Source: Neoechinorhynchus agilis
Taxonomy: Eukaryota > Animalia > Acanthocephala
Direction of reading: 5' to 3'
Length of the DNA stretch: 64,000 nucleotides
Assembly (NCBI GenBank): GCA_051530055.1
Contig: CM121343.1
Location: 7,318,044-7,382,043, forward strand
Shown: piece after piece, positions 2,810-57,700 of the stretch
Numbering within the stretch: the stretch's first letter is position 1
Layout of the letters: every line of letters begins with the position of its first letter
Position numbers and translations under genes: made by a program
The notes under the pieces: model-generated
The model's input: the letters and a program-made list of their open reading frames with translations, nothing else
Databases searched by the model: none
Told to the model about the DNA's origin: nothing

Positions 2810-5800
2810 AAAAAGATGAATCAGGGTTTCATTATAATAATAACACGTTTTATTTGTTGATGCATAAAGAACACGACCCATGTATCTTTGGGTCGTCATG
2901 AACACTCGAGTTTTGATTGGAAAATGAAACTGGCTATTGATTTTGGAGTGGATTACGAGTCCGGGCGGGTAGCAATATCCGGTCGGGTTGGAAGGTCCGT
3001 TCTGGTAGTAATTGGTGTTTATTGTTTGCAGGAACGCTTGTGAAGTTGGTTTTTCCTCCGGTTCATTTCGGGATTATGATATCCGAGAAGATTTGGCAGC
3101 AAGGAAAAAGGAGCGGAGGTAGAGGGAGGTGCGAGGTAGAGGAGGATGAAATGAATTAGGATTACGAGTGTTGTGCTCGTATGAAAAGAGGGCGATATGT
3201 GAAAGAAATCGTGGTGGTAGGGTTGATAGGCGTTTTGTTTGTTTTAAGAAAATAGTATCAAGGCATTCGGTGAGAGAGGGAAAGTCAGTTGTGCAATTTT
3301 TAGATGCTCTTTTATGAAGAATTTCAAGACGACGGAGGATAGGTTGCAAAATACGGGGTAATCGTAGGTAAGGGATGGTAAGTTAAAGAAGAAGTAAAAT
3401 TTGTAAAGGTCGAGTGTAGAAATTCCTAAATATTGGAGGCGTTTGAGGTGATAAATTTTAAAGGTGTTGTGCTCGACGGAGAGAATGATGTGCGATTCCC
3501 AGTTCAAATTTGATTGAAATTGGATACCCAGAATTCTTAGGGAGGTTACTCGTAGGATGTCATTTAGAAGCTCAGGGGATGATGTGGGGTTGCGGGAGAG
3601 AGGGGATCATTTCAAAGCATTTAGAGAAATTGAGATGGAGTTTGTAATTGGTGCAGAAATCTTTTATGCGTGTGATTTTGTTAGAGGTTAAGGAGTGAGA
3701 GAGGTGGGGTGGTGAATGGGTGATGAGGGTGAGATCGTCGGCATATAAGAAGAGTGAGAGGAGAGAGGTCTGAGGTTGTTTAGAAAAACATTAAAGAGAA
3801 GTGGTAACAGTACAGCACTTTGAGGTACGCCTTTGGTGAGATATAGGTTGATAGAAAAATTAGAACGGCAGTGAATGTATTGTTTGCGATTGTGAAGATA
3901 AGATTCGAGCCATTGGATCTGCCACAAGTTGAGACCAAAATCGGAGCAGGCCCAGAGAAGGAGTGAGTGGTCCACTTAGTCGAAAGCTTTAGATAAATCA
4001 AGTTGAATGAGATGGGTGGCATGGGAGGGATTATTGTAGAGGTTACGCAGAATCGTGTCATAAATGCAAAGTAAGGCAGCGGTTGCAGAAAATCTGAGTC
4101 GGAAGCCAAATTGTAGGGGCGATAACTTTTCGTGGGGAAGTGAAAGGCAAGATTTAAAACATTTTTCGATGATTTTTGAAAGAGCGGGTAGAATGGAAAT
4201 TGGACGGACAGTTTTCAGGCAAGAGGGGTAGATATCATATAAAAAGCTAAGGTTTATAATGCGGGTAAGAGAGTCGATTAGTTCAGGGATGATGCAGCGA
4301 AGAGCCCAGTTTGGGATTTCGGATTGAGAGGACAAATTTTTAGGTAATTTCATGAGATACTTTAGTACTTCATATGATGAAACTGAGGGGAGTATTATCG
4401 AGTTGACAGAAGCTTCAGTTGTGGGCGTAAAAGATTGTGTGGTGACTGAAGTTGATCAGTGATTGTAAACTGAGTCAGGGCAGAGGTTCTGATTCATGGA
4501 ATCTAGAACTTGTTTTAATTCAGTGGAGGTCAAATTAGCGAAGGGATCCGGGTGGTGTATACCAAGAGCGTTTTTGACGGCCCGCCACCATGTTGAGTTG
4601 CCACCTGATCAAATTTTAGAGGAAAGGAAATTTTTGCGGGCGAGAAGTATTTCATTCGTAAATGCCTTTTGTAAACGGGGAGAGTGGGAGTTATTGCGAT
4701 GGGACCTAGAAGCTTGCCTTTGTAAAAGTTTCAGAATGTGGGTTATCCATAGAGGGTCGCGGTTGGAGATTCTAATGAATTTCTTGGGAATTGCCGAAGC
4801 TAGGGAATTCTCTATGATTGAGGTTAGGGAGGACATGTCCAAGGAAGGGCCATTTGTGTTGTTAGAGTGGAATGTGCGAATATTATAGTTGAACAATTTT
4901 ATAAAATTTTGGATATGATGATCACGTTTATCCCAGACGGGTAAACGGAGAGATTTCATACGCTGAGGTGGGGTGGACGGAGTGATGAGGGCAGAGGAAT
5001 GGCCAGAGTTCGCGAGGAGAGGGAGTTTAGAGGCGGATGAGTAGGCGTCGATATTTGTGAACACTTTGTCGAGGTGAGCGTCAAAACGAGTTGGGAAGTC
5101 AATAAATTGAAGCAACTCGGAGAACGGTAGAAGAGGAAATAGATTATTGAAGTCCCCTGCAATTAAGAAATGGTGCGAATTTGTGGAGTTTATGAGCTCC
5201 ATCATAGAGTCAATTTGGAGCAAAGAGGATTCAGGACGAGAGGCCGGAGGGCGATAGACGCCAGCAATGGTGAATTCTCAAAGGCCGTTTCTCAGAGGAG
5301 TTATGAAATGGACTGTGATTAATTCTAGATCGGCGTTTTGTAGAGAGCAGTAAAGTAGCGATTGTCGTACGTAAATTGAGACCCCTGGGCGGTCATCGCG
5401 CTATGTATGGAAGGAAGAGTACCCGGGAAGGATGGCTGAATCGTTGTTGAAGGGGGTAATCCACGTTTCTGTTAAGATGACTACGTCTACTTTTGAGGTA
5501 AATGAAATGAGTGAAATTTCATCTAGTTAAGGAAGGAGGCTACGAGTATTGGAGTAGAAAACGGTGGGAAAGGGAGTTTTGGATTTCGGGAAATGGGGGA
5601 GGGCGGAAGTGAGGGAGATTGGGGTTGCATTGTTCGTTGCGGGTGGTGGGTTAAGGGAGGAATCGTTACGGGATGCCGACAAAGAACGATTGATTAGCCC
5701 AAAGAGAGAAGTTCGGGGGCGACTCCAAAATTTGAGTTGGAATGAGTGAATGGTAATGATAGAAATGAGTTTAGGGTTGGGACTTTGCATGGATCAGCTA

Positions 5801-12690: not shown

Positions 12691-15600
12691 ACTGTATCCG
12701 ACCCACTGTATAAACCAACTCGAACGGATAATCCCCTACTGGATAATTCCGCCAGAACGGACCTCCCCGTGCTGTATAAACCAACCCTAACGGATAATCC
12801 CCCGCTGTATAAACCAACCCTAACAGATAATCCCCTTCTGGATAATTCCATCCGAACGGACATACGTCCACTGTATAAACCACCCCAACTGATAATCCCT
12901 TACTGGATAATTCCACCCGGACGGACATCCCCCTGCTGTATACCAACCCGAACATAATCCCCTGCTGTATAAACCAACCCTAACGGATAATCCCCTGCTG
13001 TATAAACCAACCCGAACTTATAATCCCCTGCTGTATAAACCAACCCTAACGGATAATCCCCTGCTGTATAAACCAACCCGAACAGATAATCCCCTTCTGG
13101 ATAATTCCATCCGAACGGACATACGTCCACTGTATAAACCACCCCAACTGATAATCCCTTACTGGATAATTCCACCCGGACGGACATCCCCTTTATAAAC
13201 CAACCCGAACATAATCCCCTTTATAAACCAACCCTAACGATAATCCCCTGCTGTATAAACCAACCCGAACTTAAATCCCCTCTGAAAACCAACCCTAACG
13301 GATAATCCCCTGCTGTATAAACCAACCCGAACGGACAATCCCCCGCTGTATAAACCAACCCGAACTTATAATCCCCTGCTGTATAAACCAACCCTAACGG
13401 ATAATCCCCTGCTGTATAAACAGACCCGAACGGATAATCCCCTTCTGGATAATTCCATCCGAACGGACATACGTCCACTGTATAAACCACCCCAACTGAT
13501 AATCCCTTACTGGATAATTCCACCCGGACAGACATCCCCCTGCTGTATAAACCAACCCGAACTTATAATCCCCTGCTGTATAAACCAACTCGAACGGATA
13601 ATCCCCTGCTGTATAAACCAACCCGAACGGATAATCCCCCGCTGTATAAACCAACCCGAACGGATAATCCACCGCTGTATAAACCAACCTGAACAGATAA
13701 TCCCCTACTGGATAATTCCCCCAGAACGGACATCATCCTGCTGTATTAACCAACCCGAACGGATAATGTGGATAATTCCACCAGAACGGACATCCCCCTA
13801 CTGTATAAAGCAACCCTAACAGATAATCCCCTTCTGGATAATTCCGCCCGAACGGCTAGTCTCCTGCTGTATAAACCAACCCCAACGGACTTCCCCCGCT
13901 GTATAAACCAACCCGAACGGATCATCCCCTACTGGATAATTCCACCCGGACGGACTCCCCCTGCTGTATAAACCAACCCTAACAGATAATCCCCTTCTGA
14001 ATAATTCCGCCAGAACGGACATCCCCCTGCTGTATAAACCAACCCGAACGGATAATCCCCTTCTGGATAAATCCGCAAGAACGGACATCCGCCCACTGTA
14101 TAAACCAACCCGAACGGATAATCCCCCGCTGTATAAACCAACCCGGACGGATAATCCCCTACTGGATAATTTCGCCAGAATGGACATCCGTCCACTGTAT
14201 AAACCAACCCGAACGGATAATCCCCTTCTGGATAGTTCCGCAAGAACGGACATCCCCTGCTGTATAAACCAACCTTACAGATGATCCCCTTCTGGATAAT
14301 TTCGCATGAACGGACATCCGCCCGCTGTATAAACCAACCCTAACAGATAATCCCCTACCGGATAATTCCACCCGGACGGACTTCCTCTGCTATATAAACC
14401 AACCCGAACGGATAATCCCCTTCTGGACTATTCCGCCAGAACGGACATCTCCCTCCTGTATTAACCAACCCGAACAGATAATCCCCTGCTGGATAATTCC
14501 GCCCGAGCGGACTTCCCCCTGCTGTATGAACCAACCCTAACAGATAATCCCCTTCTGGATAATTCCACCCGAACGGCTAGTCTCCTGCTGTATAAACCAC
14601 AAGAACCCTAACCCCCGAACGGCTATCTCCTGCTGTATAACCAACCCGAACGATAATCCCCTGCTGGATAATTCCCCCGACGGCTTCCCTGCTGTATAAC
14701 CAACCCAACGTAATCCCCTCTGGATAATTCCGACGCTCCCCTGCTGTATAAACCAACCCGAACGGATAATCCCCTTCTGGATAATTCCGCCCGAACGGCT
14801 ATCTCCCGCTGTATAAACCAACCCGAACCGATAATCCCCTGCTGGATAATTCCACCCGGACGGACTTCCCCCTGCTTTATAAACCAACCCGAACGGATAA
14901 TCTCTGGATAATCCGCCCGACGGACTCCCAAAACCAACCCCCTGTATAAACCAACCTAACAGATAATCCCCTTCTGGATAATTCCTCCGAAGGACATACG
15001 CCACTGTATAAACCCCCAACGATAATCCCTTACTGGATAATTCCACCCGGACGGACATCCCCCTGCTGTATAAACCAACCCGAACGGATAATCCCTCGCT
15101 GGATAATTCCGCCCGAGCGGGCCTCCCCCTGCTGTATAAACTAACCCGAACGGATAATCCCCTGCTGGATAATTCCGCCCGAGCGGGCCTCCCCCTGCTG
15201 TATAAACCAACCTACAGATAATCCCCTTCTTGATAATTTCGCCAGAACGGACATCCGCCCACTGCATAAACCAACCCGACGGATAATCCTTCTGGATAAT
15301 TCGCCAGACGGACATCTTAACCCGAACGGATAATCCCCTACTGGATAATTCCGCCCGAGCGGGCCTCCCCCTGCTGTATAAACCAACCCGAACGGATAAT
15401 CCCCTTCTGGACTATTCCGCCAGAACGGACATCTCCCTCCTGTATTAACCAACCCGAACAGATAATCCCCTGCTGGATAATTCCGCCCGAGCGGACCTCC
15501 CCCTGCTGTATGAACCAACCCTAACAGATAATCCCCTTCTGGATAATTCCACCCGAACGGCTAGTCTCCTGCTGTATAAACCAACCCGAACCGATAATCC

Positions 15601-17030
15601 CCTGCTGGATAATTCCGCCAGAACGGCTATCTCCCGCTGTATTAACCAACCCGAACCGATAATCCCCTGCTTGATAATTCCACCCGAACGGCTAGTCTCC
15701 TGCTGTATAAACCAACCCGAACCGTTAATCCCCTGCTGGATAATTTCGCATGAGCGGGCCTCCCCTGCTGTATAAACCAACCCGAACGGATAATCCCCTA
15801 CTGGATAATTCCGCCCGAACGGCTAGTCTCCCGCTGTATAAACCAACCCGAACCGATAATCCCCTGCTGGATAATTCCACCCGGACGGACTTCCCCCTGC
15901 TTTATAAACCAACCCGAACGGATAATCCCCTGCTGGATAATTCCGCCCGGACGGACTTCCCCCTGCTGTATAAACCAACCCTAACGGATAATCCCCTGCT
16001 GTATAAACCAACCCTAACAGATAATCCCCTTCTGGATAATTCCATCCGAACGGACATACGTCCACTGTATAAACCACCCCAACTGATAATCCCTTACTGG
16101 ATAATTCCACCCGGACGGACATCCCCCTGCTGTATAAACCAACCCGAACGGATAATCCCTCGCTGTATAATTCCGCCCGAGCGGGCCTCCCCCTGCTGTA
16201 TAAACTAACCCGAAGGGATAATCCCCTGCTGGATAATTCCGCCCGAGCGGGCCTCCCCCTGCTGTATAAACCAATCCTAACAGATAATCCCCTTCTTGAT
16301 AATTTCGCCAGAACGGACATCCGCCCACTGCATAAACCAACCCGGACGGATAATTTCCTTCTGGATAATTTCGCCAGATCGGACATCTTAACCCGAACGG
16401 ATAATCCCCTGCTGGATAATTCCGCCCGAGCGGGCCTCCCCTGATAATCTCCCGCTGTATAAACTAACCCGAACGGATAATCTCCTACTGGATAATTCCG
16501 CCCGAGCGGGCCTCCCCCTGCTGTATAAACCAATCCTAACAGATAATCCCCTTCTTGATAATTTCACCAGAAGGGACATCCGCCCACTGCATAAACCAAC
16601 CCGGACGGATAATTTCCTTCTGGATAATTTCGCCAGATCGGACATCTTAACCCGAACGGATAATCCCCTGCTGGATAATTCCGCCCGAGCGGGCCTCCTG
16701 ATAATCTCCCGCTGTATAAACTAACCCGAACGGATAATCTCCTACTGGATAATTCCGCCCGAGCGGGCCTCCCCCTGCTGTATAAACCAACTCGAACGGA
16801 TAATCCCCTGCTGGATAATTCCGCCCGAGCGGGCCTCCCCCTGCTGTATAAACCAATCCTAACAGATAATCCCCTTCTTGATAATTTCGCCAGAACGGAC
16901 ATCCGCCCACTGCATAAACCAACCCGGACGGATAATTTCCTTCTGGATAATTTCGCCAGATCGGACATCTTAACCCGAACGGATAATCCCCTGCTGGATA
17001 ATTCCGCCCGAACGGACTTATCCCTGCTGT
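12690..17030 (+). repeat. Satellite array A: ~31-32-bp monomers and ~63-bp dimers with irregular higher-order blocks
   Basis: Recurrent ctgtataaaccaacccgaacggataatcccc and ctggataattccgcccgaacggacatcccc. Starts immediately after the LINE 3' UTR motif. Confidence 0.95.
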
Positions 17031-17429
17031 ATAATAACAATTTTATTTGATCATACGTACGAACAGGAGTGTCAGAGGGCCATAACATAAGTTGTGCAAT
17101 CATTCATTTCGAACATCCATCCATCCATCTGCATAGATTATGTTTCAAGTAGTCAATATCTGGCTGCTTGATGAATAGTGCATTTTTTAGCAGAACCTCT
17201 CCAAAAATAAGACGTTGATCCGGAGGTCCACCGCGACTAAAAACGTGAGGCCAGAGATGGCCCATGTTTTCCAAATTTGAACGCGTTTTTTCCGTTAGTT
17301 TCAGCTTACTTGTTCTAACATAAAAACCTTTTGTTATTTGAGAATTTTATTAAAATGTGTCAGGTCAAATTTCTGATTCAACCTTGCATTAAAATTATAT
17401 CCTAAAATCTTAATTCGGTTGAATTTTTT

Positions 17430-33450: not shown

Positions 33451-34959
33451 ATGTGGTGATTAAAATGGGGACTTTATTATCCGGACCGAATTCCCCTTGA
33501 AGGGCAGTTTAAAAAATATGAAAGCCGTAAAAGTTCACAGGCTCATTTAATTCAAATGGACTATGATTATTGGGGTTATAGGAAGGAATGTTTTTGTGGT
33601 TAAAAATAATAGTGCTCAAAAGCCGAAGGTATTGTTGAGCCGGTATTCGTCCGTGCACTGAAGAACGAAGAGGTTAAACTGTTACTTCATTTCGATGCGG
33701 TATGTTGCAGTTTAGGTTAGCATAACGCACCTTTCTCGAGCATTTCCCTTACGCAAGGAAGCACTTTTACGAAAATTGTCTTTCAAAAAGAGACAATTTT
33801 CTGGACTAAAATGACATTTAAAAGAATCAGCTAGGAGAAAATTGCGACAGCGTTTATCACTGACCTCTTGAGCATTTCTATGTACGGTTCAGACGAATGA
33901 CTGTTCACATTAAAACTAACCGAGTTATCATTGCTGTGGACCTTTTTTGGGGGGCAGAGTCAATTGATGTCCAGAAAAACTATATTTGGAATTGAACCAC
34001 GCTCCTTGGACTAGTCCGTCATGTGATAACGGCTTCAAAACTATCGAATGATGCATTGCAATATCCAAAATTCTTTTTGATGATTAACGCCATTTGATAG
34101 AATGAAGCGATCTTCTTGTACTACTTCAACGGTTATTGGCTTTATAATTTATTCCCGATCGATGTAGTCAAGAGAAAATTCCTCAGGATGATGATTCTTA
34201 GGTGACTGACGAAGTTTCCACCTTCGAAATATCCTCAATAAAACGTGTTTTATCCGGGGGAGGACTTCACGTTCAATTTTGATGATCCTTGAAACGGGTT
34301 AGCGTGGATGAGGTCGGAAGGCGCCGTTAAAGAAGTCACATTTTACATTGCAACACAAAAGCACGAACTTCAAAATGAGAACTTTGGAAAACGTTTGGAG
34401 ATGTTGTCTAGGTTCATTTAGAATTTAATTATCAGGCATACGGAAGAATCAAAGAAGAACTTACGTTAAAAGTGTACACGAAAGCAGAGTTTGCAACCTT
34501 AATTGGCACTGGAAACTTAGTTAATTTTTCTATGCATCTCTAAATTTATCCGATAATTCAATTTTTACTTGTCTATAGCGGTTTTGAGGAACAATCTTGT
34601 ACGCCTTTATCCACTTTCACACAATTCCGTTTTCATTGTGTGACGTCGTAGAAATTTATTCTTCGGCGCCGAGCTAAGAAATTAGTCAATTCAAGTCCGG
34701 AATTTAAAGAAAGTCGATCAATTTCCGTTGGGTTTATTTTCAAGATTTAGCTTGGCTGGCAGCGATGCGACATTTAGTCACTTAGATTAAATGATGAGCT
34801 CAGCGTTTTTTAAATGACTTCTGAGAATTTAGGATTCCCAACCGCATTTCCGGTATTTTAGCTAACGTTCCACGATTAAAGTTTTTATTTTTCCGTGAAT
34901 ATTCGCTTTCTCGTAGAATATAGATTTAATGATATCGAGAAAATCCATCGAGATGGTAA

Positions 34960-35109
34960 ATTTTGACTTGTGGAAATATATTCACCCGGTATTGTTCTGA
35001 AATATTTCGAAAGAGGAAACCTTGCCTAATCATTTATTGCTTGCGAGGTTTCCTCTTTCGAAATATTTCAGAACAGTACCGGGCGAATATATTTTCCACA
35101 AGTCAAAAT
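34960..35109. mobile_element. ~150-bp hairpin MITE just upstream of PFDN4
   Basis: ~65-bp arms attttgacttgtggaaatatattc..gaaagaggaaaccttgc / gcgaggtttcctctttc..tattttccacaagtcaaaat, with TA dinucleotides near both ends. Confidence 0.75.
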
Positions 35110-35179
35110 ATAGGTTTAATTCGTGCAAATAAGGGTCAATGGATTCTTTGTCATTGGAATATAAAGATATTCTTTAGAT

Positions 35180-35584: not shown

Positions 35585-35837
35585 ATTCATGCAAGAAATC
35601 CGCGACTGTCTTCATCTTAATCAATAGCTTGGATGTGCCCCTTGAATACAGAAGTGGAACACGATATTTCCTGTTGCATTTTCAGTACACTTGCCCTTTA
35701 TTTTACAGTTAAACTCTTTTGTCATTTGAAATGCACTCAGGCAGCTCAATTTCGCTAAAAGAGCACAAAAATCGTTTATTTGCAAATAACAACGAGGCTT
35801 ATCAGTTAAATTGGTTACTGACAAGGATTTATATATC

Positions 35838-38800
35838 GAGTTCGCGTGGGAATATCCAGCCGAGCGATGTCCGTTCGGGTGGGAATTGTCGGAGAGATGT
35901 CTATTCGGGCGGCACTATCAAGTCAGGTGATGTCCGTTCGAATGGGAACTATCCAGTCGGAGGATGTCAGTACGGGTGGAAATGGTTGGCGCGATGTCTA
36001 TTCGGCTATGACTTTCCAGTCGGGGGATGTCCATTCGGGTGAGAACTATCAAGTCAGGTGATTTCCGTTCGGGTTGGAACTATCCAGTCGGAGGATGTCA
36101 GTACGGGTGGCAATCGTTGGCGCGATGTCTATTCGGCTATGACTATCCAGTCGGGGGATGTACGTTCGGGTGGGAATGGTAAAAGGGATCTCCGTTCGGG
36201 TTTGACTTTCCAGTCGGGGGATGTCCATTCGGGTGGGAACTATCAAGTCAGGTGATGTCCGTTCGGGTGGGAACTATCCAGTCGGAGGATGTCAGTACGG
36301 GTGGAAATGGTTGGCGCGATGTCTATTCGGCTATGACTATTCAGTCGGGGGATGTACGTTCGGGTGGGAATGGTAAAAGGGATCTCCGTTCGGGTTTGAC
36401 TTTCCAGTCGGGGGATGTCCATTCGGGTGGGAACTATCAAGTCAGGTGTCCGTTCGGTGGGAACTATCCAGTCGGAGGATGTCAGTACGGGTGGAAATGG
36501 TTGGCGCGATGTCTATTCGGCTATGACTATTCAGTCGGGATGTACGTTCGGGTGGGAATGGTAAAAGGGATCTCCGTTCGGGTTTGACTTTCCAGTCGGG
36601 GGATGTCCATTCGGGTGGGAACTATCAAGTCAGGTGATGTCCGCTCGGGTGGGAACTATCCAGTCGGAGGATGTCAGTACGGGTGGTAATCGTTGGCGCG
36701 ATGTCTATTCGGCTATGACTATCCAGTCGGGGATGTACGTTCGGGTGGGAATGGTAAAAGGGATCTCCGTTCGGGTTTGACTTTCCAGTCGGGGGATGTC
36801 CATTCGGGTGGGAACTATCAAGTCAGGTGATGTCCGTTCGGGTGGGAACTATCCAGTCGGAGGATGTCAGTACGGGTGGAAATGGTTGGCGCGATGTCTA
36901 TTCGGCTATGACTATTCAGTCGGGGGATGTACGTTCGGGTGGGAATGGTAAAAGGGATCTCCGTTCGGGTTTGACTTTCCAGTCGGGGGATGTCCATTCG
37001 GGTGGGAACTATCAAGTCAGGTGATGTCCGCTCGGGTGGGAACTATCCAGTCGGAGGATGTCAGTACGGGTGGTAATCGTTGGCGCGATGTCTATTCGGC
37101 TATGACTATCCAGTCGGGGGATGTACGTTCGGGTGGGAATGGTAAAAGGGATCTCCGTTCGGGTTTGACTTTCCAGTCGGGGGATGTCCATTCGGGTGGG
37201 AACTATCAAGTCAGGTGATGTCCGCTCGGGTGGGAACTATCCAGTCGGAGGATGTCAGTACGGGTGGAAATCGTTGGCGCGATGTCTATTCGGCTATGAC
37301 TATTCAGTCGGGGGATGTACGTTCGGGTGGGAATGGTAAAAGGGATCTCCGTTCGAGTTTGACTTTCCAGTCGGGGGATGTCCATTCGGGTGGGAACTAT
37401 CAAGTCAGGTGATGTCCGCTCGGGTGGGAACTATCCAGTCGGAGGATGTCAGTACGGGTGGAAATGGTTGGCGCGATGTCTATTCGGCTATGACTATTCA
37501 GTCGGGGGATGTACGTTCGGGTGGGAATGGTAAAAGGGATCTCCGTTCGGGTTTGACTTTCCAGTCGGGGGATGTCCATTCGGGTGGGACTATCAAGTCA
37601 GGTGATGTCCGCTCGGGTGGGAACTATCCAGTCGGAGGATGTCAGTACGGGTGGAAATGGTTGGCGCGATGTCTATTCGGCTATGACTATCCAGTCGGGG
37701 GATGTACGTTCGGGTGGGAATGGTAAAAGGGATCTCCGTTCGAGTTTGACTTTCCAGTCGGGGGATGTCCATTCGGGTGGGAACTATCAAGTCAGGTGAT
37801 GTCCGTTCGGGTGGGAACTATCCAGTCGGAGGATGTCAGTACGGGTGGTAATCGTTGGCGCGATGTCTATTCGGCTATGACTATTCAGTCGGGGGATGTA
37901 CGTTCGGGTGGGAATGGTAAAAGGGATCTCCGTTCGGGTTTGACTTTCCAGTCGGGGGATGTCCATTCGGGTGGGACTATCAAGTCAGGTGATGTCCGCT
38001 CGGGTGGGAACTATCCAGTCGGAGGATGTCAGTACGGGTGGAAATGGTTGGCGCGATGTCTATTCGGCTATGACTATTCAGTCGGGGGATGTACGTTCGG
38101 GTGGGAATGGTAAAAGGGATCTCCGTTCGGGTTTGACTTTCCAGTCGGGGGATGTCAATTCGGGTGGGACTATCAAGTCAGGTGATGTCCGTTCGGGTGG
38201 GAACTATCCAGTCGGAGGATGTCAGTACGGGTGGAAATGGTTGGCGCGATGTCTATTCGGCTATGACTATTCAGTCGGGGGATGTACGTTCGGGTGGGAA
38301 TGGTAAAAGGGATCTCCGTTCGGGTTTGACTTTCCAGTCGGGGGATGTCCATTCGGGTGGGACTATCAAGTCAGGTGATGTCCGTTCGGGTGGGAACTAT
38401 CCAGTCGGAGGATGTCAGTACGGGTGGAAATGGTTGGCGCGATGTCTATTCGGCTATGACTATTCAGTCGGGGGATGTACGTTCGGGTGGGAATGGTAAA
38501 AGGGATCTCCGTTCGAGTTTGACTTTCCAGTCGGGGGATGTCCATTCGGGTGGGACTATCAAGTCAGGTGATGTCCGTTCGGGTGGGAACTATCCAGTCG
38601 GAGGATGTCAGTACGGGTGGAAATGGTTGGCGCGATGTCTATTCGGCTATGACTATTCAGTCGGGGGATGTACGTTCGGGTGGGAATGGTAAAAGGGATC
38701 TCCGTTCGAGTTTGACTTTCCAGTCGGGGGATGATAATTCGGGTGGGACTATCAAGTCAGGTGATGTCCGTTCGGGTGGGAACTATCCAGTCGGAGGATG

Positions 38801-41800
38801 TCAGTACGGGTGGAAATGGTTGGCGCGATGTCTATTCGGCTATGACTATTCAGTCGGGGGATGTACGTTCGGGTGGGAATGGTAAAAGGGATCTCCGTTC
38901 GAGTTTGACTTTCCAGTCGGGGGATGTCCATTCGGGTGGGACTATCAAGTCGGTGATGTCCGTTCGGGTGGGAACTATCCAGTCGGAGGATGTCAGTACG
39001 GGTGGTAATCGTTGGCGCGATGTCTATTTGGCTATGACTATCCAGTCGGGGGATGTACGTTCGGGTGGGAATGGTAAAAGGGATCTCCGTTCGAGTTTGA
39101 CTTTCCAGTCGGGGGATGTCAATTCGGGTGGGACTATCAAGTCAGGTGATGTCCGTTCGGGTGGGAACTATCCAGTCGGAGGATGTCAGTACGGGTGGAA
39201 ATGGTTGGCGCGATGTCTATTCGGCTATGACTATTCAGTCGGGGGATGTACGTTCGGGTGGGAATGGTAAAAGGGATCTCCGTTCGAGTTTGACTTTCCA
39301 GTCGGGGGATGTCCATTCGGGTGGGACTATCAAGTCAGGTGATGTCCGTTCGGGTGGGAACTATCCAGTCGGAGGATGTCAGTACGGGTGGTAATCGTTG
39401 GCGCGATGTCTATTCGGCTATGACTATCCAGTCGGGGGATGTACGTTCGGGTGGGAATGGTAAAAGGGATCTCCGTTCGAGTTTGACTTTCCAGTCGGGG
39501 GATGTCCATTCGGGTGGGACTATCAAGTCAGGTGATGTCCGCTCGGGTGGGAACTATCCAGTCGGAGGATGTCAGTACGGGTGGAAATGGTTGGCGCGAT
39601 GTCTATTCGGCTATGACTATTCAGTCGGGGGATGTACGTTCGGGTGGGAACTATCAACAGGGATGTCCGTTCGGGATAGTACGGTGGAATGTTGGCGCGA
39701 TGTCTATTCGGCTATGACTATTAAGTCGGATGTTTCGAGTTTGACTTTCCAGTCGGGGGATGTCCATTCGGGTGGGACTATCAAGTCAGGTGATGTCCGT
39801 TCGGGTGGGAACTATCCAGTCGGAGGATGTCAGTACGGGTGGTAATCGTTGGCGCGATGTCTATTCGGCTATGACTATCCAGTCGGGGGATGTACGTTCG
39901 GGTGGGAATGGTAAAAGGGATCTCCGTTCGAGTTTGACTTTCCAGTCGGGGGATGTCCATTCGGGTGGGAACTATCAAGTCAGGTGATGTCCGCTCGGGT
40001 GGGAACTATCCAGTCGGAGGATGTCAGTACGGGTGGAAATGGTTGGCGCGATGTCTATTCGGCTATGACTATTCAGTCGGGGGATGTACGTTCGGGTGGG
40101 AATGGTAAAAGGGATCTCCGTTCGGGTTTGACTTTCCAGTCGGGGGATGTCCATTCGGGTGGGACTATCAAGTCAGGTGATGTCCGCTCGGGTGGGAACT
40201 ATCCAGTCGGAGGATGTCAGTACGGGTGGAAATGGTTGGCGCGATGTCTATTCGGCTATGACTATTCAGTCGGGGGATGTACGTTCGGGTGGGAATGGTA
40301 AAAGGGATCTCCGTTCGGGTTTGACTTTCCAGTCGGGGGATGTCCATTCGGGTGGGACTATCAAGTCAGGTGATTTCCGCTCGGGTGGGAACTATCCAGT
40401 CGGAGGATGTCAGTACGGGTGGAAATGGTTGGCGCGATGTCTATTCGGCTATGACTATTCAGTCGGGGGATGTACGTTCGGGTGGGAATGGTAAAAGGGA
40501 TCTCCGTTCGGGTTTGACTTTCCAGTCGGGGGATGTCCATTCGGGTGGGAACTATCAAGTCAGGTGATGTCCGTTCGGGTGGGAACTATCCAGTCGGAAG
40601 ATGTCAGTACGGGTGGAAATGGTTGGCGCGATGTCTATTCGGCTATGACTATTAAGTCGGGGGATGTACGTTCGGGTGGGAATGGTAAAAGGGATCTCCG
40701 TTCGAGTTTGACTTTCCAGTCAGGGGATGTCCATTCGGATGGGAACTATCAAGTCAGGTGATGTCCGTTCGGGTGGGAACTATCCAGTCGGAAGATGTCA
40801 GTACGGGTGGAAATGGTTGGCGCGATGTCTATTCGGCTATGACTATTAAGTCGGGGGATGTACGTTCGGGTGGAAATGGTAAAAGGGATCTCCGTTCGAG
40901 TTTGACTTTCCAGTCGGGGGATGTCCATTCGGATGGGAACTATCAAGTCAGGTGATGTCCGTTCGGGTGGGAACTATCCAGTCGGAGGATGTCAGTACGG
41001 GTGGAAATGGTTGGCGCGATGTCTATTCGGCTATGACTATTAAGTCGGGGGATGTACGTTCGGGTGGAAATGGTAAAAGGGATCTCCGTTCGAGTTTGAC
41101 TTTCCAGTCAGGGGATGTCCATTCGGATGGGAACTATCAAGTCAGGTGATGTCCGTTCGGGTGGGAACTATCCAGTCGGAGGATGTCAGTACGGGTGGTA
41201 ATCGTTGGCGCGATGTCTATTTGGCTATGACTATTCAGTCGGGGGATGTACGTTCGGGTGGAAATGGTAAAAGGGATCTCCGTTCGGGTTTGACTTTCCA
41301 GTCGGGGGATGTCCATTCGGATGGGACTATCAAGCCAGGTGATGTCCGTTCGGGTGGGAACTATCCAGTCGGAGGATGTCAGTACGGGTGGTAATCGTTG
41401 GCGCGATGTCTATTCGGCTATGACTACCCAGTCGGTGGATGTACGTTCGGGTGGGAATGGTAAAAGGGATCTCCGTTCGGGTTTGACTTTCCAGTCAGTT
41501 GATGTCCGCTCGGGTGGAAACTATACAGTCGGAGGATGTCAGTACGGATGGTAATCGTTGGCGCGATGTCTATTCGGCTATGTCTATCCAGTCGGGGGAT
41601 GTACGTTCGGGTGGGAATGTTAAAAGGCATCTCCGTTCGAGTTTGACTTTCCAGTCTAGGGATGTCAATTCGGGTGCGACTATCAAGTCAGGTGATGTCC
41701 GCTCGGGTGGGAACTATCCAGTCGGAGGATGTCAGTACGGGTGGTAATCGTTGGCGCGATGTCTATTCGGCTACGACTATCCAGTCGGGGGATGTACGTT

Positions 41801-44200
41801 CGGGTGGGAATGGTAAAAGGGATCTCCGTTCGAGTTTGACTTTCCAGTAGGGGGATGTCCATTCGGGTGGGAACTATCAAGTCAGGTGATGTCCGTTCGG
41901 GTGGGAACTATCCAGTCGGAGGATGTCAGTACGGGTGGAAATGGTTGGCGCGATGTCTATTCGGCTATGACTATCCAGTCTGGGGATGTACGTTCGGGTG
42001 GGAATGGCAAAAGGGATCCCCGTTCGGGTTTGACTTTCCAGTCGAAGGATGCCCATTCGGGTGGGACGATCAAGTCAGCTGATGTCCGTTCGGGTTGGAA
42101 CTATCCAGTCGGAGGATGTCAGTACGGGTGGTAATCGTTGGCGCGATGTCTATTCGGCTATGACTATCCAGTCGGGGGATGTACGTTCGGGTGGGAATGG
42201 TAAAAGGGTTCTCCGTTCGGGTTTGACTTTCCAGTCGAAGGATGTCCATTCGGGTGGGACTATCAAGTCAGGTGACGTTCGCTCGGGTGGGAACTATCCA
42301 GTCGGAGGATGTCAGTACGGGTGGAAATGGTTGGCGCGATGTCTGTTCGAGTTGGACTATCTTGTCGGGGGATGTCCGTTCGGGTGGCAGTTGTCGAAGA
42401 AATGTCCATTCGGGTGATACTATCCAGTCGGGGGATGTCTGGACGGGTGGGAATTGTCGGAGGGATGTCTATTCGGTTTGCACTATCCAGTCGGGGGATA
42501 TCCGTTCGGGTGGGAATCGTCGGCGGGATGTCCGTTCGGGAAGGGCTTTCCAGTTGGGGGATGTCCGTTCGGGTGGGAATCGTAGGAGGATTGTCTATTC
42601 GGACGGGACTACCCAGTCGGGGGATGTCCGTCCCGATTCCAATGGTCGGCGTTGGGCTCTGATTATCCAGTTGGGGAATGTACGTTGGGGTAGGAATAGT
42701 CGAAGACATGTCCGTTCGGATATGACTTTCCAGTCGGGGGATTTCCGTTCGTGTTCGAAAGGTCGGAGAATGCCCATTCGGGTAGGAACTATCCAGTCGG
42801 GTGTTGTCCATTAAGGTTTTAATGGTCGGAGGGATGTCCGTTCGGGTTTGACTATCCAGTCGGGGGATATCCGTTCGGGTGGGAATCTTCGGCGGGATGT
42901 AGATTCGGATTAGATTATGCAGTAGGGGGATGTCCGTTCGGGCATGAATGGTCGAAGGAATGCCATTTGGGTGGCAACTATCCAGTCGGAGGATGGCCGT
43001 TCGGGTTGGAATGGTCGGAGTGATGTCTATTTGACTATGACTATCCACTCGGGGGATGTGCGTTCGGGTGTCAGTGGTCGAAGGGATGTCCGTTCGGGTT
43101 CTACTTTGCAGTCGAGGGATGTCCGTTCGGTTGGGAATGTAGTCGGGGAATGTCCGTTAAGGTTTGAATGGACCCAGGGATGTCCTTTCGGGTTGGACTA
43201 TCCAGTCGGGGGATGTCTGTAAGGTTATAATGGAACGAGGGATGTCCGTTTGGATTGGACTATCCAGTCGGCGGATGTCCGTTAGGATGGGAATGGTGGA
43301 AGGGATGTCCGTTCGGGTTTTACTTTTAAGTCGGGGATGTCCGTTCGGAAAGGAATGGTCGGAAGGATGTATATTCGGGTGGGAATATCAATTCGAGGGA
43401 CGTCCGTTCAGGTGGGAATGGTCGGAGGGATGCCAATTCTAGTGGGACTATCCAGTCGGGGTATGTAAGTACGGGTGGGATTGGTCGGAGCGATGTCCGT
43501 TCGGCTATAACTTTCCAGTCGGGGATGTCCGTTCGGGCGGGAATGGTCGGAGATATGTCTATTCGGGTTGGACTTTCCAGTCGGGGGATGTCCTTTCAAG
43601 TAGGAATGGTCGGAAGGATGTCTATTCGGGTTGGACTTTCCAGTCGGGGGATGTCGGTTCAAGTAGGAATGGTCGGAAGGATGTCTATTCGGGTGGCCGT
43701 ATCGAATCGAGGGATGGCCGTTCGGGTTGGAATGGTCAGACTATCCAGTCAAGGGGTGCTCGTTCGGATGGGAATGGCCGGAGAGGGTTCATTCGGAAGG
43801 GATTATCATGTAGGGGGATGTCATTTCGGGGTGGGAATGGTCGGAGCAATTCCCATTCGGGTGGGAACTATCAATTGGGGGGTGTCCGTTCGGGTTGAAA
43901 TGGTCGAGGGGATACCCATTCGGGTGGGACTATCCATTCCGGGTATGTCCGTTCGGGTAGGAATGGTGGGGGATACCCATTCGTGTGGGACTATACAGTC
44001 GGGGGATGCCCGGACGCGTGGGAATGGTCGGAGGGATGTCTATTCTGGTTGAACTTTCCAGTCGATGGATGTCCGTTCGGGTGGGGGCTATCCAGTCGGG
44101 AGATGTCCGGACGCGTGGGAATGGTCGGAGGGATGTCTATTCTGGTTGAACTTTTCAGTCGTTGGATGTCCGTTCGGGTGGGACTATCCAGTCGGGGATG
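35838..44200 (-). repeat. Satellite array B: ~32-bp monomers; homogeneous 193/194-bp six-monomer higher-order repeat (~35930-42350), diverged monomers to 44200
   Basis: Identical ORF calls recur every 194 bp (36827, 37021, 37215, 37409) or 193 bp (37959, 38152, 38345, 38538). Each unit has six gatgtc/gatct-initiated monomers. Confidence 0.95.
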
Positions 44201-44640
44201 TGAGCTCGGTTGCGAAATGGTGGTTATTTTTTGAAGGGGAGTTTGTAAGGTTTGCTTTTAATCAGGCTCATTTTAAGTTATGATATCCAAAAGGATTTAG
44301 CAGCGGTAGGGGAGGATGAAACGAATTAGGATTACAAGTGTTGTGCTCGTGTGAAGGGGGGATACAATGTAGTTGTAGGGTTGATAGGCGTTTTGTTTGT
44401 TTTAAGAAAATAGTATCAAGGCTTTCGGTGAGAGGATGAAAGTCAGCTGTGCAAATTTTAGATGCTCTTTTATGAAACATTTTACGGCGACGGAGTTGAG
44501 GTTTTGAAATGTTGCAAAATACGGAATAACCGTAGATGATGGAAAGTAAAATAAAGCTGAAATTTGTAGAGATGGGGTGAAGGGATTCTTTAATGTTGGC
44601 CCAGAATTCTTTGGGAGGTTACTCGTAGGATATCATTTAG
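44200..44640 (-). mobile_element. 5'-truncated LINE copy (ORF2 C-terminus) abutting array B
   Basis: ESLDTIFLKQTKRLSTL...HEHNTCNPNSFHPPLP...GYHNLK, homologous to 3074-3349. Confidence 0.8.
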
Positions 44641-51280: not shown

Positions 51281-52003
51281 CCGTAAGTCGAACATTACGA
51301 AGCTCGATTATCTCAGATCTCTCAAAGAAAAACGAAATCTTTAAAGATGCGTTTTATTAACCCCATCAAAAGTCATTTTATATAAAATGCCGTTTAGATA
51401 ACTCGAGAGAGTCAATCGGAAGCTACAAAAATTAAGCAAAACGTCTAACAATCTTTGCCGTAGTCAAAAGCGTAAAGAAAACTTAAAAATTCGAAATAAA
51501 GACTGATATAAATTGTTTTTCCGTAAGTCGCACATTACGAAGCTCGATTATCTCAGATCTCTCAAAGAAAAACGAAATCCTTAAAGATGCGTTTTATTAA
51601 CCCCATCAAAAGTCATTTTATATAAAATGCCGTTTAGATAACTCGAGGGGGTCAATCGGAAGCTACAAAAATTAAGCAAAACGCCTAACAATCTTTGCCG
51701 TAGTCAAAAGCTTAAAGAAAACCTAAAAATTCGAAATAAAGACTGATATAAATTGTTTTTCCGTAAGTCGCACATTACGAAGCTCGATTATCTCAGATCT
51801 CTCAAAGAAAAACGAAATCCTTAAAGATGCGTTTTATTAACCCCATCAAAAGTCATTTTATATAAATTGCCGTTTAGATAACTCGAGGGAGTCAATCTGA
51901 AGCTACAAAAATTAAGTAAAACGTCTAACAATCTTTGCCGTAGTCAAAAGCGTAAAGAAAACCTAAAAATTCGAAATAAAGACTGATATAAATTGTTTTT
52001 CCG
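51281..52003. repeat. Three tandem copies of a 240-bp unit
   Basis: ccgtaagtcg starts at 51281, 51521 and 51761. Copies are near-identical. Confidence 0.95.
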
Positions 52004-52006
52004 CCA

Positions 52007-52710
52007 GAAGGAGAACTTTTCCTTGGGTTTATAGAATATTATGCAAAATTTTCATTTAATTCCAGGATAGTATCGGTCCGCACGGGGAATGTACACGATT
52101 TTGATAGCCTTGATGAATTTGTATCAAAACAGGACCTATTCATGCCCGTACAAATGAATGTTGAAGAACCATTTGAACACTTGAACGTTACCAAAGGAAT
52201 TACTCAAGATAAATATCGTAAAATTATTATGACATTTAAATCGACCGCACACTTTATCAGATCACATCGAAGTATAGAGGAACTCGTCGGCTTAGAATGA
52301 AGATTATTAGAGTGAGGATGCCAATAAATTAAGCTGGAATTGAGTTTGTGTTCAGAAAAGTCGATATCGGCAATAGAATTATTTCGTTTATGTAACAAGA
52401 CTTAATAAGCTCATAGATTTATGAGCGGCGCTTTTTCGGAGATGAAATCATTCACACCACCGCCTTTCTGGATCCCTCAGCTGCCGTCCGGGTGTAACGG
52501 TCGAAAGGACGGATGCAGCGTCCCCCCCGTGCTGCAGAATTATGTTTTGTGGGAGGAATGCTTCAGATCTCGGATTGCCGGTGATTCGTCTCAATCTCTT
52601 AGACAATTGACGACGCCAAAGGGAACGAAATAATGATTTCGACTCTGGTCCCTGTATTTGGTGCGCTTCCCCTGGTTTAATAGTGGCGAATTTTATGTTG
52701 CTTGCTGCGA
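52007..52710 (+). pseudogene. Near-identical duplicate of the 3' end of the GLD-2-like gene and its downstream CRE-like fragment (source 60274-60983)
   Basis: Base-for-base match with a few substitutions and one small deletion. No 5' part of the gene. Confidence 0.9.
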
Positions 52711-54791: not shown

Positions 54792-57700
54792 TGTAAACAC
54801 GTCCGCAACGCATTGAACTCAAACGCTTCAACTATTTTATGGGTCCACCAACAAATAAAAAAGCTAAAACCCACGCACGCTCGCATATTAGCGTTGCACA
54901 AGGTAACCGTTTCGGCTCTGTCCTTATGTCTAGTGACCATACAAAGATATTGAAACAATGTGGTTCTGAAGAAACCCGCAAAAACAGCGATAGGGTTATT
55001 TATGAACCGCAGATGGGCAATAATCCGGGTCAAAAGGCGGATATTCCGGTTCGTGTTTCCTTGTTTTCCGATTGCTCTTTTTCTTATGTGGTCGGCATGG
55101 ATTCTCTTCTCACCCACATGAGATAGTGGCCCATTGTCCCTGGTCCGTACCTTATCATCCATATTTTACTCTGTTAGTTTCGCACAATTCTTATCATGGA
55201 ACTGCTAGATGTCTCAGTAGCTCACGGTTTTATATTATCCCATAGGGACTTTATTCGTCTCCCGAACATCATCTCCGCTGGGCATTTCTGCGTTATCCTA
55301 TGTGGCGTTTTCCTGTACGACATCAGGAAGTTTTGAAGGCTGAGGTGTTCTGGTTTCGCCCTTCTTTTAAGGATGGCCACAAACCTCGCCACTAGGCCAT
55401 TCGTCCTCGGATGGCATATCGAACTCTTACAATGTGTGATTCCGTTTTCGTCACAAAATGTTTTGAATTCATTTGATATGAATTGCGGCCCGTTATCGGA
55501 TACGATTCGCTCCGGAATTCCGAATCTTGCGAATGCCTCTCGTTTGACCGTCGTTTGTGCTGTTCGAATAAGCATCTACTCCTACGAGAAAATACAATCC
55601 ATTCATCGGGCCTGCGAAATCTAGATGAATTCTTCTCCATGGTCCCGTGGGGATATCCCATGGGAACAATGGTTGTTCGAGAGAACTTGGGCGCTGTCTC
55701 CGGCATTCAATGCAGTATGCCACAGGTTTTTGGATATCCCTATCCATCCTCGGTCACCAACAGTAATATCTGGCCAGGACAATCATTCCTTTTTCTTCTG
55801 GATGTCCTTCATGTAGCTTTTGCATTATCGCCTTTCTTTCTGAAGACGGAATCACCATCCAATCCAACCATAATAGCACGTCGTTCTCCGCAGATAGCTC
55901 GTCCTTACGTTTTTTAAAATCGATACCTTCAGTTCTAGCTTTTCCAGGCCATCCCGATATCAGATAACGCTTAATTCGAGCTATTTGGGTATCTTTGATT
56001 CGCTTCTTAGATTTGACAGTGATAAATTAAGAATTGTCGATGTTTCTTCTCTTATGTGTGCTATATCCGTGTCCGGCATATTCGGGAGGTCAAGGTCTTG
56101 AGTGCTAGGCATTCGGGACAGTACATTAGCGTAACAGTTATCGACACCGGCTACATGTTTGAATTCATAATCATATTCCGATAACTGAATCGCCCATCTT
56201 ATTAATCGAGAGTTCCCCACCTTTCCAAGATTTCGTTGGCGTCCAAAGATGTATTCCAGAGGCTTGTGGTCCGTATATAATTGAAATTTTCGTCCAAACA
56301 CAATATCGTGGAATCGTTTCACACCATATACCAGTGCCAGAGCTTCTTTTTCAATTTGCGAGAAATTCTCTTCTGCGGCTTTCAGCACTTGAGAAGCAAA
56401 GCACACTGGTTGGAGATCGTTTTCTTCAGTGATGTGGAATAGCACTGTGCCAAGTCCTGACTCACTAGCATCACAGGTTAAGGCTATGTTCCTTTTTGAT
56501 CGTAAGGAGGTCTCCTCAGCGTTTCGTTAAACTTTTCAAACGCGTTCTGGTGTTCCTGGTTCCATTGCCAATTTTTACCTTTTTGTGTCAATTCGCAAAG
56601 CGCGTTGCAAAATCGATGAAATTCGGCGCAGAATCGTGCATGAAAATTAGCTAGGCCCTAGAATGCTCTCAGGTCTTTTGCATTCTTCGGTTCAGAAGCC
56701 TCTTTCAGCTCCATTGCTCTATCTTCCGAAGGTTTTATCTGCCGTTGTTTGATGATATGACCAAGATATTGCACTTCATCCCTTGAAAACTGACATTTTT
56801 CTTCTTTTACTTTAATTCCTGCTTTGTTCGGCTTTCCGATAGCCTTCCAAAGTCGCTCTATGTGTTCTTCTTCCGACCTTACCGAGATTATGATATCGTC
56901 CAAAGAAGCTCCTACCCCATCTATTCCTTGCAGCATCTCTGAAATGTAATTTTGAAAAATTGCTGATGCCGGTGAAATTTCAAATGGCAGTCGATTGTAC
57001 TTAAAGAAACTATATTGTGTAGCAATCGTTAGTAGTCTACTTATTTGATCATCCACAGGAATCTGTGGATATGCGTCCCTCAGATCAATGGCGCTATATT
57101 GTGTGGCACCCGCCAGTTTGCGCGTTAGTTCTTCGAATGTGGGCATGAAGTACGAATCAACTTGGAGTTGCTGATTAAGAGTTACACGGAAATCTTCACA
57201 AATTAGTACCTTCCCTCTGGTCTTCCAAACTACTACAATTGGCGTGACCCATTCTATTTCGTCTTGATTCGCATCTACTGATCTACTTCCGCTTTTAATG
57301 GATCCTGTAGTGCAAGCGGAATCCTTCTCGCACCACATACGCATTGTTCGGCGTCCTCCTTCAGAACCAAGCTTGCTTCGAAATTCTTTATCGGATCTGA
57401 TTCATTGTTGAACACTGAAAGGATCGATTTCTTCAATTTTGCGCATAATGCTTCGCTTTTATCACTTCCTTCCGTATTGATCCTGTGAACCTCTACGAGC
57501 TCCGCTGGAATTTTTAATCCAAACTGCAAAATCCATGGTAGTCCAAACAATGATTTACCTTATTCTGGTACTACAACGGCTTTAACTCTTCTCCATTTCT
57601 TGCCTAGCTTCACATTCATTGAACATCTTCTAAGGCTCTTGATCTCTGTTCCTCCAAAAGCTCTTGGCGTATTTGTTGGTCTTAATTTAGGTTTTCCGAT

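What the first reader, a model, noticed from the sequence alone, without database searches (positions are those of the whole stretch)
35838..44640. Satellite B: independent expansion from the same LINE site, with a polar age gradient and its own 194-bp higher-order repeat
The array abuts a minus-strand LINE C-terminus (44200-44640) in the same relative orientation as array A. Monomers nearest the LINE (42350-44200) are heterogeneous. Distal ones are locked into a near-identical six-monomer 193/194-bp repeat that differs from the organisation of array A. The far end returns to a ggatattcc..aactcg-like UTR motif, so the array looks like an expansion inside the UTR. Inference: directional growth away from the LINE, either by unequal exchange or by repeated RT template slippage or jumping.
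Basis: partly seen in the sequence, partly recalled or inferred. Interest (0 to 1): 0.75.

Follow-up and report, generated by a model that had tools for sequence, protein, structure and literature searches.

The report
LINE-tail satellite with two age layers
An 8.4-kb block of 30-33-base repeats in a thorny-headed worm grew out of the short repeat in the tail of a jumping gene (a LINE); the part next to the LINE is old and scrambled and the far part is a young 193-base higher-order repeat, which is a clear example of an already known way of making satellite DNA.

Summary
Window 35841-44204 is a real array of 261 monomers of two kinds, a (30 bp) and b (33/34 bp). It starts about 60 nt after the stop codon of a 5'-truncated, minus-strand LINE remnant (44205-44632). 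Array A sits at the same position and orientation relative to its own LINE.

The 58 monomers next to the LINE (42350-44204) are diverged a-b dimers. The rest (about 35900-42350) is about 31 copies of a six-monomer 193/194-bp higher-order repeat (abbbab), up to 100% alike in its centre. In this assembly that repeat occurs at 95% identity or more only here. A and B monomers separate almost completely on a tree.

The old/young asymmetry is real, but it is a step between two domains, not a smooth gradient. Both original array borders are kept, so growth was internal. Common variants are reshuffled among repeat copies, which points to exchange and conversion at the locus rather than one reverse-transcriptase slippage event. 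The usual LINE 3' terminus is missing after B. The same polarity in sister arrays fades once the few ancestral 5' units are excluded.

The scan had already followed up the same phenomenon on array A (s1-280774). This is an ordinary member of a known kind. The organism is Neoechinorhynchus agilis, not human.

The parts
44271..44632 (-). 5'-truncated remnant of LINE ORF2 C-terminus. The frame is open for 116 codons (44271-44618). Homology to other copies ends near 44632. There is a 90-bp in-frame deletion at 44599/44600 relative to copy 1 in the window.
   Evidence: BLASTP gives 64% identity, E 2e-34, to residues 343-432 of the RVT_1-bearing ORF of L003. DNA matches window 3135-3436 and 3527-3567. 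There are 638 first-look candidates for this tail in the genome, 66 matches listed.
44205..44270 (-). Stop codon (44268-44270) and the unique start of the LINE 3' UTR. It runs into a degenerate first repeat unit (44205-44230).
   Evidence: The same junction sequence precedes array A and the 1-6 units of ordinary LINE copies.
42350..44204 (-). Old domain: 58 monomers in strict a-b alternation (63-bp dimer). Nearest-neighbour monomer identity is about 0.86. It includes a recent 97-bp local duplication at 43980-44201.
   Evidence: It is no more than 72% identical to anything else in the genome.
41446..42349 (-). Transition zone: older copies of the higher-order repeat, with 5-15 differences per 193 bp from the repeat majority. 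One copy is cut to 160 bp.
36165..41445 (-). Young core: about 26 copies of the six-monomer repeat (a b b b a b, 193/194 bp), mostly 0-8 differences from the majority. An irregular, partly deleted stretch lies at about 39640-39896, between a mainly 193-bp block and a mainly 194-bp block.
   Evidence: Found at 95% or more only at this locus. Variants are mosaic: 24/28 four-gamete pairs.
35841..36164 (-). Distal edge: two non-repeat monomers plus partial, roughly 85-95% repeat copies. The terminal unit carries the GGATATTCC..ACGCGAACTCG motif (35837-35873), which marks the end of the repeat block in ordinary LINE tails.
   Evidence: The flank 35590-35845 is single copy and shows no significant similarity to the LINE 3' terminus.
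12706..17046 (+). Array A, for comparison: 135 monomers of a different subfamily, 3' of plus-strand LINE copy 10867-12692.
3024..5223 (-). Reference LINE copy in the window. It has reverse transcriptase (3976-4353), an endonuclease-like part (4609-5223), and a tail with only 2-3 repeat units followed by the canonical 3' terminus (about 2815-3010).
   Evidence: RVT_1 at 33 bits, above the cut-off. Sequence read. Alignments.

Best explanation
Array B is satellite (minisatellite-type) DNA born from the short internal tandem repeat in the 3' UTR of an endonuclease-type non-LTR retrotransposon (LINE) of Neoechinorhynchus agilis.

Shown:
- A 5'-truncated LINE copy sits here on the minus strand.
- Its UTR repeat block normally has 1-6 units of about 30-33 bp. 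Here it has 261 units.
- The block keeps its original proximal junction and its original terminal unit.

Inferred:
- Growth happened at the locus, in at least two waves, by unequal sister-chromatid or homologue exchange and/or replication slippage, with gene conversion among copies.
- The first wave built an a-b (63-bp) dimer array, which has since diverged to about 76-86% identity.
- Later a six-monomer unit arose near the distal side. It corresponds to four dimers minus two a units (193 bp).
- That unit was amplified to about 31 copies and is still being homogenised. Its centre is youngest and both of its edges are older.
- The result is an asymmetric layout with old DNA near the LINE and young DNA far from it.

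No function is implied. The G-rich strand is dense in G-quadruplex motifs, which may favour replication errors.
For: - LINE identity: RVT_1 hits and the C-terminus match.
- Same junction as in other copies and in array A.
- Ordinary copies carry only 1-6 units.
- Other arrays are bracketed by tail and terminus.
- LINE tails lie 5' in the right orientation at 6 of 12 arrays by BLAST, two more by eye, and none in the wrong orientation.
- Monomers are array-specific: 0.86-0.95 within an array against 0.65-0.89 between arrays. The A/B label changes 3 times on the monomer tree against about 69 when shuffled.
- The higher-order repeat is unique to the locus, and so is the proximal part.
- Two-domain profile.
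- Diverged edges of the repeat domain and 193/194/387-bp sub-blocks.
- Mosaic variants, 24/28 four-gamete pairs.
- G4 motifs: 36 on the G-rich strand against 7.2 +/- 2.4 in shuffles.
Against: - No target-site duplication could be identified.
- The canonical LINE 3' terminus is absent after B, so a later deletion or a non-canonical origin of this copy must be assumed.
- Array length and fine structure rest on one assembly, and no reads were available.
- The four-gamete pattern could partly reflect recurrent mutation.
- Why the young domain lies on the distal side is not explained.
Confidence: 0.75

Rival explanations
1. The array, or at least its homogeneous domain, was made by the LINE reverse transcriptase. 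In this view repeated template slippage or jumping on the UTR repeats during the target-primed reverse transcription that created this copy meant the repeat copies were born together at insertion.
For: The number of UTR units varies from about 1 to 6 among ordinary copies, as expected if the enzyme slips on them. Several arrays lie neatly between LINE tail and LINE terminus. The young part is at the 3' side, where reverse transcription starts. The repeat is locus-specific, which a one-off event would also give.
Against: Common variants are shared by subsets of repeat copies in mosaic combinations, 24/28 four-gamete pairs. There are 193, 194 and 387-bp sub-blocks and diverged copies at both edges of the domain. 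A single copying event predicts a star-like pattern instead. The LINE 3' terminus, where priming should begin, is missing after B.
Confidence: 0.12
2. B is a secondary copy of an array that arose elsewhere. It was moved by segmental duplication, ectopic recombination or a circular intermediate, and lies beside a LINE fragment for that reason rather than by growth at this site.
For: A precedent exists. The 67-bp-dimer array at C3:7.445 Mb (L052) recurs at 97-99% identity at the end of the contig (L053), with a different 3' flank and no LINE terminus. B also lacks the terminus.
Against: No twin of B's higher-order repeat or of its proximal domain exists in this assembly. The proximal junction is at the same nucleotide position as in ordinary LINE copies.
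Confidence: 0.06
3. The long homogeneous domain is wholly or partly an assembly artefact, that is, a mis-expanded or mis-joined repeat.
For: Near-identical tandem copies are hard to assemble. There is an irregular, partly deleted stretch at about 39640-39896 between two blocks. Two related arrays end contigs.
Against: Copies differ by a structured set of variants rather than being identical or random. The array is joined to unique DNA on both sides. The public annotation of the same contig also contains it, though that is the same assembly.
Confidence: 0.05

Closest known systems
Satellite DNA born from tandem repeats in the 3' UTR of retrotransposons, such as PisTR-A from Ogre elements of pea. 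Macas et al. 2009 as cited in PMC9659126 and PMC5615363; Vondrak et al., PMC7004042.
   Same: A short, variable tandem repeat inside the element's 3' UTR is amplified into long arrays at some loci. The arrays keep the element's flanks.
   Different: Here the element is a LINE and not an LTR retrotransposon. The units are only 30-33 bp, and the host is an acanthocephalan.
LINE-derived satellites: the cetacean common satellite (L1 3' part), Drosophila 18HT from the HeT-A 3' non-coding region, and chicken HinfI from the CR1 3' UTR/ORF2. Listed in the review PMC9659126.
   Same: Satellite monomers are homologous to the 3' part of a non-LTR retrotransposon.
   Different: As far as the review describes them, those satellites were recognised by sequence similarity of the monomer to the 3' part of the element. 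Here the founder state (1-6 units), the junctions and many independent arrays are all visible in one genome.
Array A of the same window and its sister arrays
   Same: Same LINE family, same UTR site, same orientation.
   Different: B uses other monomer subtypes (a 30-bp type is present). It has a 193/194-bp six-monomer repeat, is twice as long and has a much sharper old/young split.
Layered alpha-satellite arrays and polar GC-rich minisatellites of humans (own knowledge; not tested here).
   Same: Higher-order repeats with a young core and older flanks. G-rich strand asymmetry and an end-biased pattern.
   Different: There is no evidence here for centromere function or for a flanking hotspot. 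Polarity across alleles cannot be examined.

Membership tests
Transposon-UTR-derived satellite DNA | Monomer is homologous to a short tandem repeat present in dispersed copies of the element | tested here: met
   Ordinary LINE tails carry 1-6 monomer-like units at the same place.
Transposon-UTR-derived satellite DNA | Array occupies the same position and orientation within the element as the founder repeat | tested here: met
   The junction lies about 60 nt after the ORF2 stop in B, A and other copies. There are 6-8 arrays with the tail 5' and none reversed.
Transposon-UTR-derived satellite DNA | Element sequence on both sides of the array (expansion inside the UTR) | tested here: inconclusive
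   Met at L052, L054, L056, L060 and L063. For B only the terminal monomer-like motif is kept. The 65-130-bp LINE terminus is not detectable.
Transposon-UTR-derived satellite DNA | Copy number far above the founder state, with locus-specific homogenisation | tested here: met
   261 units against 1-6. Identity is 0.90 within the array against 0.71-0.79 to other arrays. The higher-order repeat is unique to the locus.
Non-LTR retrotransposon (LINE) | Reverse transcriptase domain | tested here: met
   RVT_1 at 33 bits in window copy 1 and 68 bits in L003. Relatives carry RVT_1 with Exo_endo_phos domains.
Non-LTR retrotransposon (LINE) | Apurinic-type endonuclease domain | tested here: inconclusive
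   Exo_endo_phos_2 reaches only 13 bits, below the cut-off, in the degraded window copy. The clade was not determined.
Non-LTR retrotransposon (LINE) | 5' truncation and target-site duplication of the copy at B | tested here: inconclusive
   Homology stops near 44632, which is a 5' truncation. No convincing duplication was found at 35840/44633 by inspection.
Centromeric or subtelomeric satellite | CENP-A or H3K9me3 enrichment, or a chromosome-end position | not testable with these tools
   B lies about 454 kb from the end of a 7.82-Mb contig. Related arrays cluster in the last 0.74 Mb, but no chromatin or cytological data are at hand.

The most novel reading that the evidence does not exclude
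Arrays born from this LINE tail turn over preferentially at the side that is 3' in LINE sense. This would be an intrinsic polarity set by the repeat itself (G-quadruplex-prone antisense strand) or by a flanking LINE element, like the polar mutation of human minisatellites. In that case the old-proximal/young-distal layout of B would be a rule and not an accident. In 10 of 11 arrays the 3' third is the more homogeneous (p 0.012). The signal weakens to non-significance when the ancestral 5' units are left out.
Probability: 0.15. Interest if true: 0.55.

Novelty: new member of a known kind. Interest (0 to 1): 0.3.

Why it matters
The locus shows, in one place, the steps by which satellite DNA arises from a transposon tail:
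- the founder units;
- an old dimeric array;
- a young higher-order repeat that is still being homogenised.

It is useful as a worked example and for repeat annotation of this genome. The public annotation places a 'hypothetical protein' inside the array. It does not change what is known about how satellites arise. Only the possible intrinsic polarity would be new, and that is not established.

Tried and rejected
- Rfam scans of the window and of six LINE-tail loci found nothing. The conserved stem-loop-like stretch in the LINE 3' terminus therefore matches no described RNA family.
- Local alignment of B's distal flank against six canonical LINE termini scored at chance level, and the flank is single copy.
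- Inspection for a target-site duplication at 35840/44633 found only 4 bp.
- A protein search with an array ORF, run to look for independent assemblies or transcripts, returned only the annotated protein of the same contig.
- A protein search with the LINE RT ORF gave unnamed RVT_1 relatives at 33% identity or less, so no clade name was obtained.
- A general 5'-to-3' polarity rule across arrays was significant at first but not after removing the ancestral 5' units. It is not claimed.
- A first fuzzy-regex segmentation failed and was replaced by wrap-around alignment.

Full report
**Source and context.** The window is G000:C3:7318044-7382043 of a 46-Mb assembly. Earlier notes of this scan named the animal as the acanthocephalan Neoechinorhynchus agilis. 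I confirmed this: an ORF from the array matches an NCBI protein named for that species on a contig of 7,816,151 bp, which is the length of C3. The sequence is not human. The window holds ordinary animal genes, including CCT2, zinc-finger genes and a gamma-glutamyl-transferase-like ORF.

**Is the array there?** Yes. TRF reports one continuous repeat block at 35840-44201:
- basic period about 33 bp, with a 63/66-bp dimer;
- a 193-bp repeat at 35948-39675 (19 copies, 97% matches);
- a 194-bp repeat at 39734-41524 (97%), also seen as 387 bp;
- a 193-bp repeat at 41465-42584 (87%);
- only 59-76% matches between neighbouring units from about 42500 to 44200.

The block is G-rich on the plus strand, with GC skew +0.33 to +0.36. 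A wrap-around alignment to one monomer cuts it into 261 units of two kinds, a (30 bp) and b (33/34 bp). Typing every unit against the six positions of the higher-order repeat gives a regular 1-2-3-4-5-6 order (a b b b a b) from about 35900 to 42350. From 42350 to 44204 the order is strict a-b alternation.

**Is the flank a LINE C-terminus?** Yes.
- The stretch 44205-44640 recurs in the window at 3010-3567 (same strand) and, inverted, at 2110-2415 and 12384-12692.
- The copy at about 3024-5223(-) carries RVT_1 above Pfam's cut-off at 3976-4353 and a weak endonuclease-like match upstream.
- The open 116-codon frame 44271-44618(-) is 64% identical (E 2e-34) to residues 343-432 of a 439-aa ORF at locus L003. 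That ORF has RVT_1 at 68 bits in residues 90-300.
- So 44271-44632 is the C-terminal end of ORF2, and the stop codon is 44268-44270.
- Homology to other copies ends near 44632, which is a 5' truncation. Relative to copy 1 there is a 90-bp in-frame deletion at 44599/44600.
- The family is abundant: 638 first-look candidates for this tail, 66 matches listed, and the best other copies are 73-84% identical to B's flank.
- Relatives in the protein database are unnamed RVT_1 proteins at 33% identity or less, some with Exo_endo_phos domains. I could not name the clade.

**Where do the monomers come from?** In ordinary copies of this LINE, the unique UTR sequence is followed by only 1-6 monomer-like units. 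In many copies a shared 3' terminus of 65-130 bp comes next. It has a short GC stem and ends in AATAAACGTGTTATTATTA. Array A begins at exactly this point after plus-strand LINE copy 10867-12692. Array B begins there on the other strand. Among 12 related arrays fetched from the genome:
- six have a BLAST-detectable LINE tail directly 5' in the expected orientation;
- two more have a diverged tail visible by eye;
- none has a tail in the wrong orientation.

At L052, L054, L056, L060 and L063 the array is followed by the LINE 3' terminus. The expansion there is literally inside the UTR.

**The far end of B.** The last unit (35841-35873) and the four bases after it read, in LINE sense, GGATATTCCCACGCGAA|CTCG. 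This matches the unit that closes the repeat block in ordinary tails (GGATATTCCAACTCG, or GGATATTGCCACCCGCCCGGACTCG). What normally follows is not there. The next 134 nt align to six canonical termini no better than shuffled sequence, and 35590-35845 is single copy in the genome. B keeps both original borders of the repeat block but has lost, or never had, the LINE terminus.

**Independent expansion.**
- A two-unit probe of the higher-order repeat finds matches at 95% or more only inside B. The best match elsewhere is 74%.
- The diverged proximal 1.7 kb is also without a close relative, at 72% or less, and its best matches lie within B itself.
- Unique monomers of each of 11 arrays find their best partner within their own array (mean 0.86-0.95), not in another (0.65-0.89). 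B against A is 0.74-0.75.
- On a tree of 207 unique A and B monomers the A/B label changes only 3 times, against about 69 (minimum 56) for shuffled labels.
- Within B, dimer-domain and repeat-domain monomers change 13 times, against about 37 for shuffled labels.
- A has no 30-bp type, and its own periodicities are 66, 99, 197, 259 and 323 bp.

**The 'polar age gradient'.** The asymmetry is real. Best intra-array identity of 132-bp windows is as follows:

| Window coordinates | Best intra-array identity |
|---|---|
| 42405-44204 | 0.76-0.79 |
| 41205-42404 | 0.96 |
| 36405-41204 | 0.99-1.00, with a dip at an irregular stretch near 39.7 kb |
| 35841-36404 (distal edge) | 0.96 |

Spearman rho along the array is 0.72. 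The shape is a step between two domains plus a transition, not a smooth gradient. The higher-order domain has the usual form of a homogenised array. Its central copies differ from the majority at 0-2 positions. Proximal copies differ at 5-15 positions, and the distal end carries partial copies of about 85-95% identity. The six-monomer unit can be read as four a-b dimers that lost two a units (252 - 60 = 192/193 bp). This makes the dimer domain the older state; that step is inference.

**How did it grow?** Eight variant positions are each shared by four or more repeat copies. Of the 28 pairs of these positions, 24 show all four combinations, and the variant 'haplotypes' are interleaved along the array. 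Together with the 193, 194 and 387-bp sub-blocks and the 160- and 188-bp deletion copies, this is what repeated unequal exchange, slippage and conversion at the locus produce. A single burst of reverse-transcriptase slippage or template jumping would give copies that were identical at birth and now differ only by private changes. I therefore favour growth at the locus in at least two waves (confidence 0.75). I keep enzyme-made growth as a minor rival (0.12). It remains plausible for the small 1-6 unit variation among ordinary copies.

**G-quadruplex motifs.** The G-rich strand, antisense to the LINE, carries 36 non-overlapping G-quadruplex motifs, against 7.2 +/- 2.4 in shuffles and none on the other strand. 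This may promote replication errors, but I did not test it.

**Is the polarity a rule?** I oriented 11 complete arrays by monomer strand.
- The 3' third is more homogeneous than the 5' third in 10 (binomial p 0.012, Wilcoxon p 0.003). A twelfth, partly fetched 9-kb array on C34 shows the same.
- Ordinary tails begin with a few degenerate ancestral units, which alone would lower the 5' value.
- After dropping the first 200 or 330 bp the counts are 8/10 and 7/8, and the tests are no longer significant.
- Only B shows a large effect, and A a modest one. I report this as an open lead, not a finding.

**A caution on 'each array is its own expansion'.** The 67-bp-dimer array at C3:7.445 Mb recurs at 97-99% identity at the very end of contig C3. 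There it has a different 3' flank and no LINE terminus. Arrays can therefore also be copied to new places. No such twin exists for B in this assembly.

**Comparison with what is known.** Birth of satellites from tandem repeats in retrotransposon 3' UTRs is established for plant Ogre elements. Similarity of satellites to the 3' parts of LINEs is reported for L1 in cetaceans, HeT-A in Drosophila and CR1 in chicken (review PMC9659126; PMC7004042; reference list of PMC5615363). The scan's own follow-up of array A (s1-280774) already described this LINE-tail repeat as grown into arrays at a dozen or more places. My checks agree with it. B is thus a further, particularly well-layered member of a known kind.

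**Limits.**
- No reads were available, so assembly error in array length cannot be excluded.
- No second individual and no chromatin data were available.
- The clade of the LINE is not named.
- No target-site duplication was found.

Noticed in passing
window 41502-42131 (+): The public annotation has a 170-aa 'hypothetical protein ACOME3_010249'. Its best tblastn match in the window is inside array B (81% over a gapped alignment), so it is very likely a spurious gene model made of satellite repeats.
   Followed up: partly
L052 (C3:7445-7448 kb) and L053 (C3:7814-7816 kb, contig end): The same 67-bp-dimer array occurs at two loci 370 kb apart, in opposite orientation, at 97-99% identity. The first has the LINE tail and terminus. 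The second runs into the contig end and has a different 3' flank without a LINE terminus.
   Followed up: partly
contig C3, 7.08-7.82 Mb: Of seven related arrays found on C3, five (including A and B) lie in the last 0.74 Mb of the 7.82-Mb contig and one ends the contig. Two small contigs (C34, C37) also consist largely of such arrays. This may be a chromosome-end enrichment, or a search bias.
   Followed up: no
G000:C2:8608798-8610473 (L029): A piece of the LINE ORF2 C-terminal region (query positions 78-170 of B's flank) is itself repeated four times at a spacing of about 528 bp. This is a second, different tandem repeat made from the same LINE.
   Followed up: no
window 6704-10047 and 22601-23655: A 356-bp satellite has 9.4 copies at 97% identity. 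A three-copy block of the same unit lies inverted 12.5 kb away.
   Followed up: no
window 2549-2738, 17997-18182, 34957-35112, 59012-59180: Four fold-back (palindromic) stretches of 156-194 bp at 77-93% arm identity. One lies 0.7 kb left of array B. Earlier notes on this genome describe hairpin-shaped inserts and fold-back transposons.
   Followed up: no
window 2110-2415 (+) and 2984-3308 (-): Two LINE tails point at each other, 570 bp apart, each with only 1-3 repeat units. The plus-strand one belongs to a subfamily whose 3' terminus lacks the GC stem.
   Followed up: partly
window 51281-52003; 52007-52710 vs 60274-60983; 55981-57344 (-): A 240-bp tandem repeat (3 copies, 97%), a 0.7-kb dispersed duplicate (98.6%), and ORF fragments on the minus strand that look like a retroelement polymerase (read from the ORF translations only; not run against Pfam).
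   Followed up: no
window about 39640-39896: An irregular stretch with several small deletions lies inside otherwise regular repeat copies, at the border between the mainly 193-bp and mainly 194-bp blocks. It may be a scar of an unequal exchange or a local assembly error.
   Followed up: no
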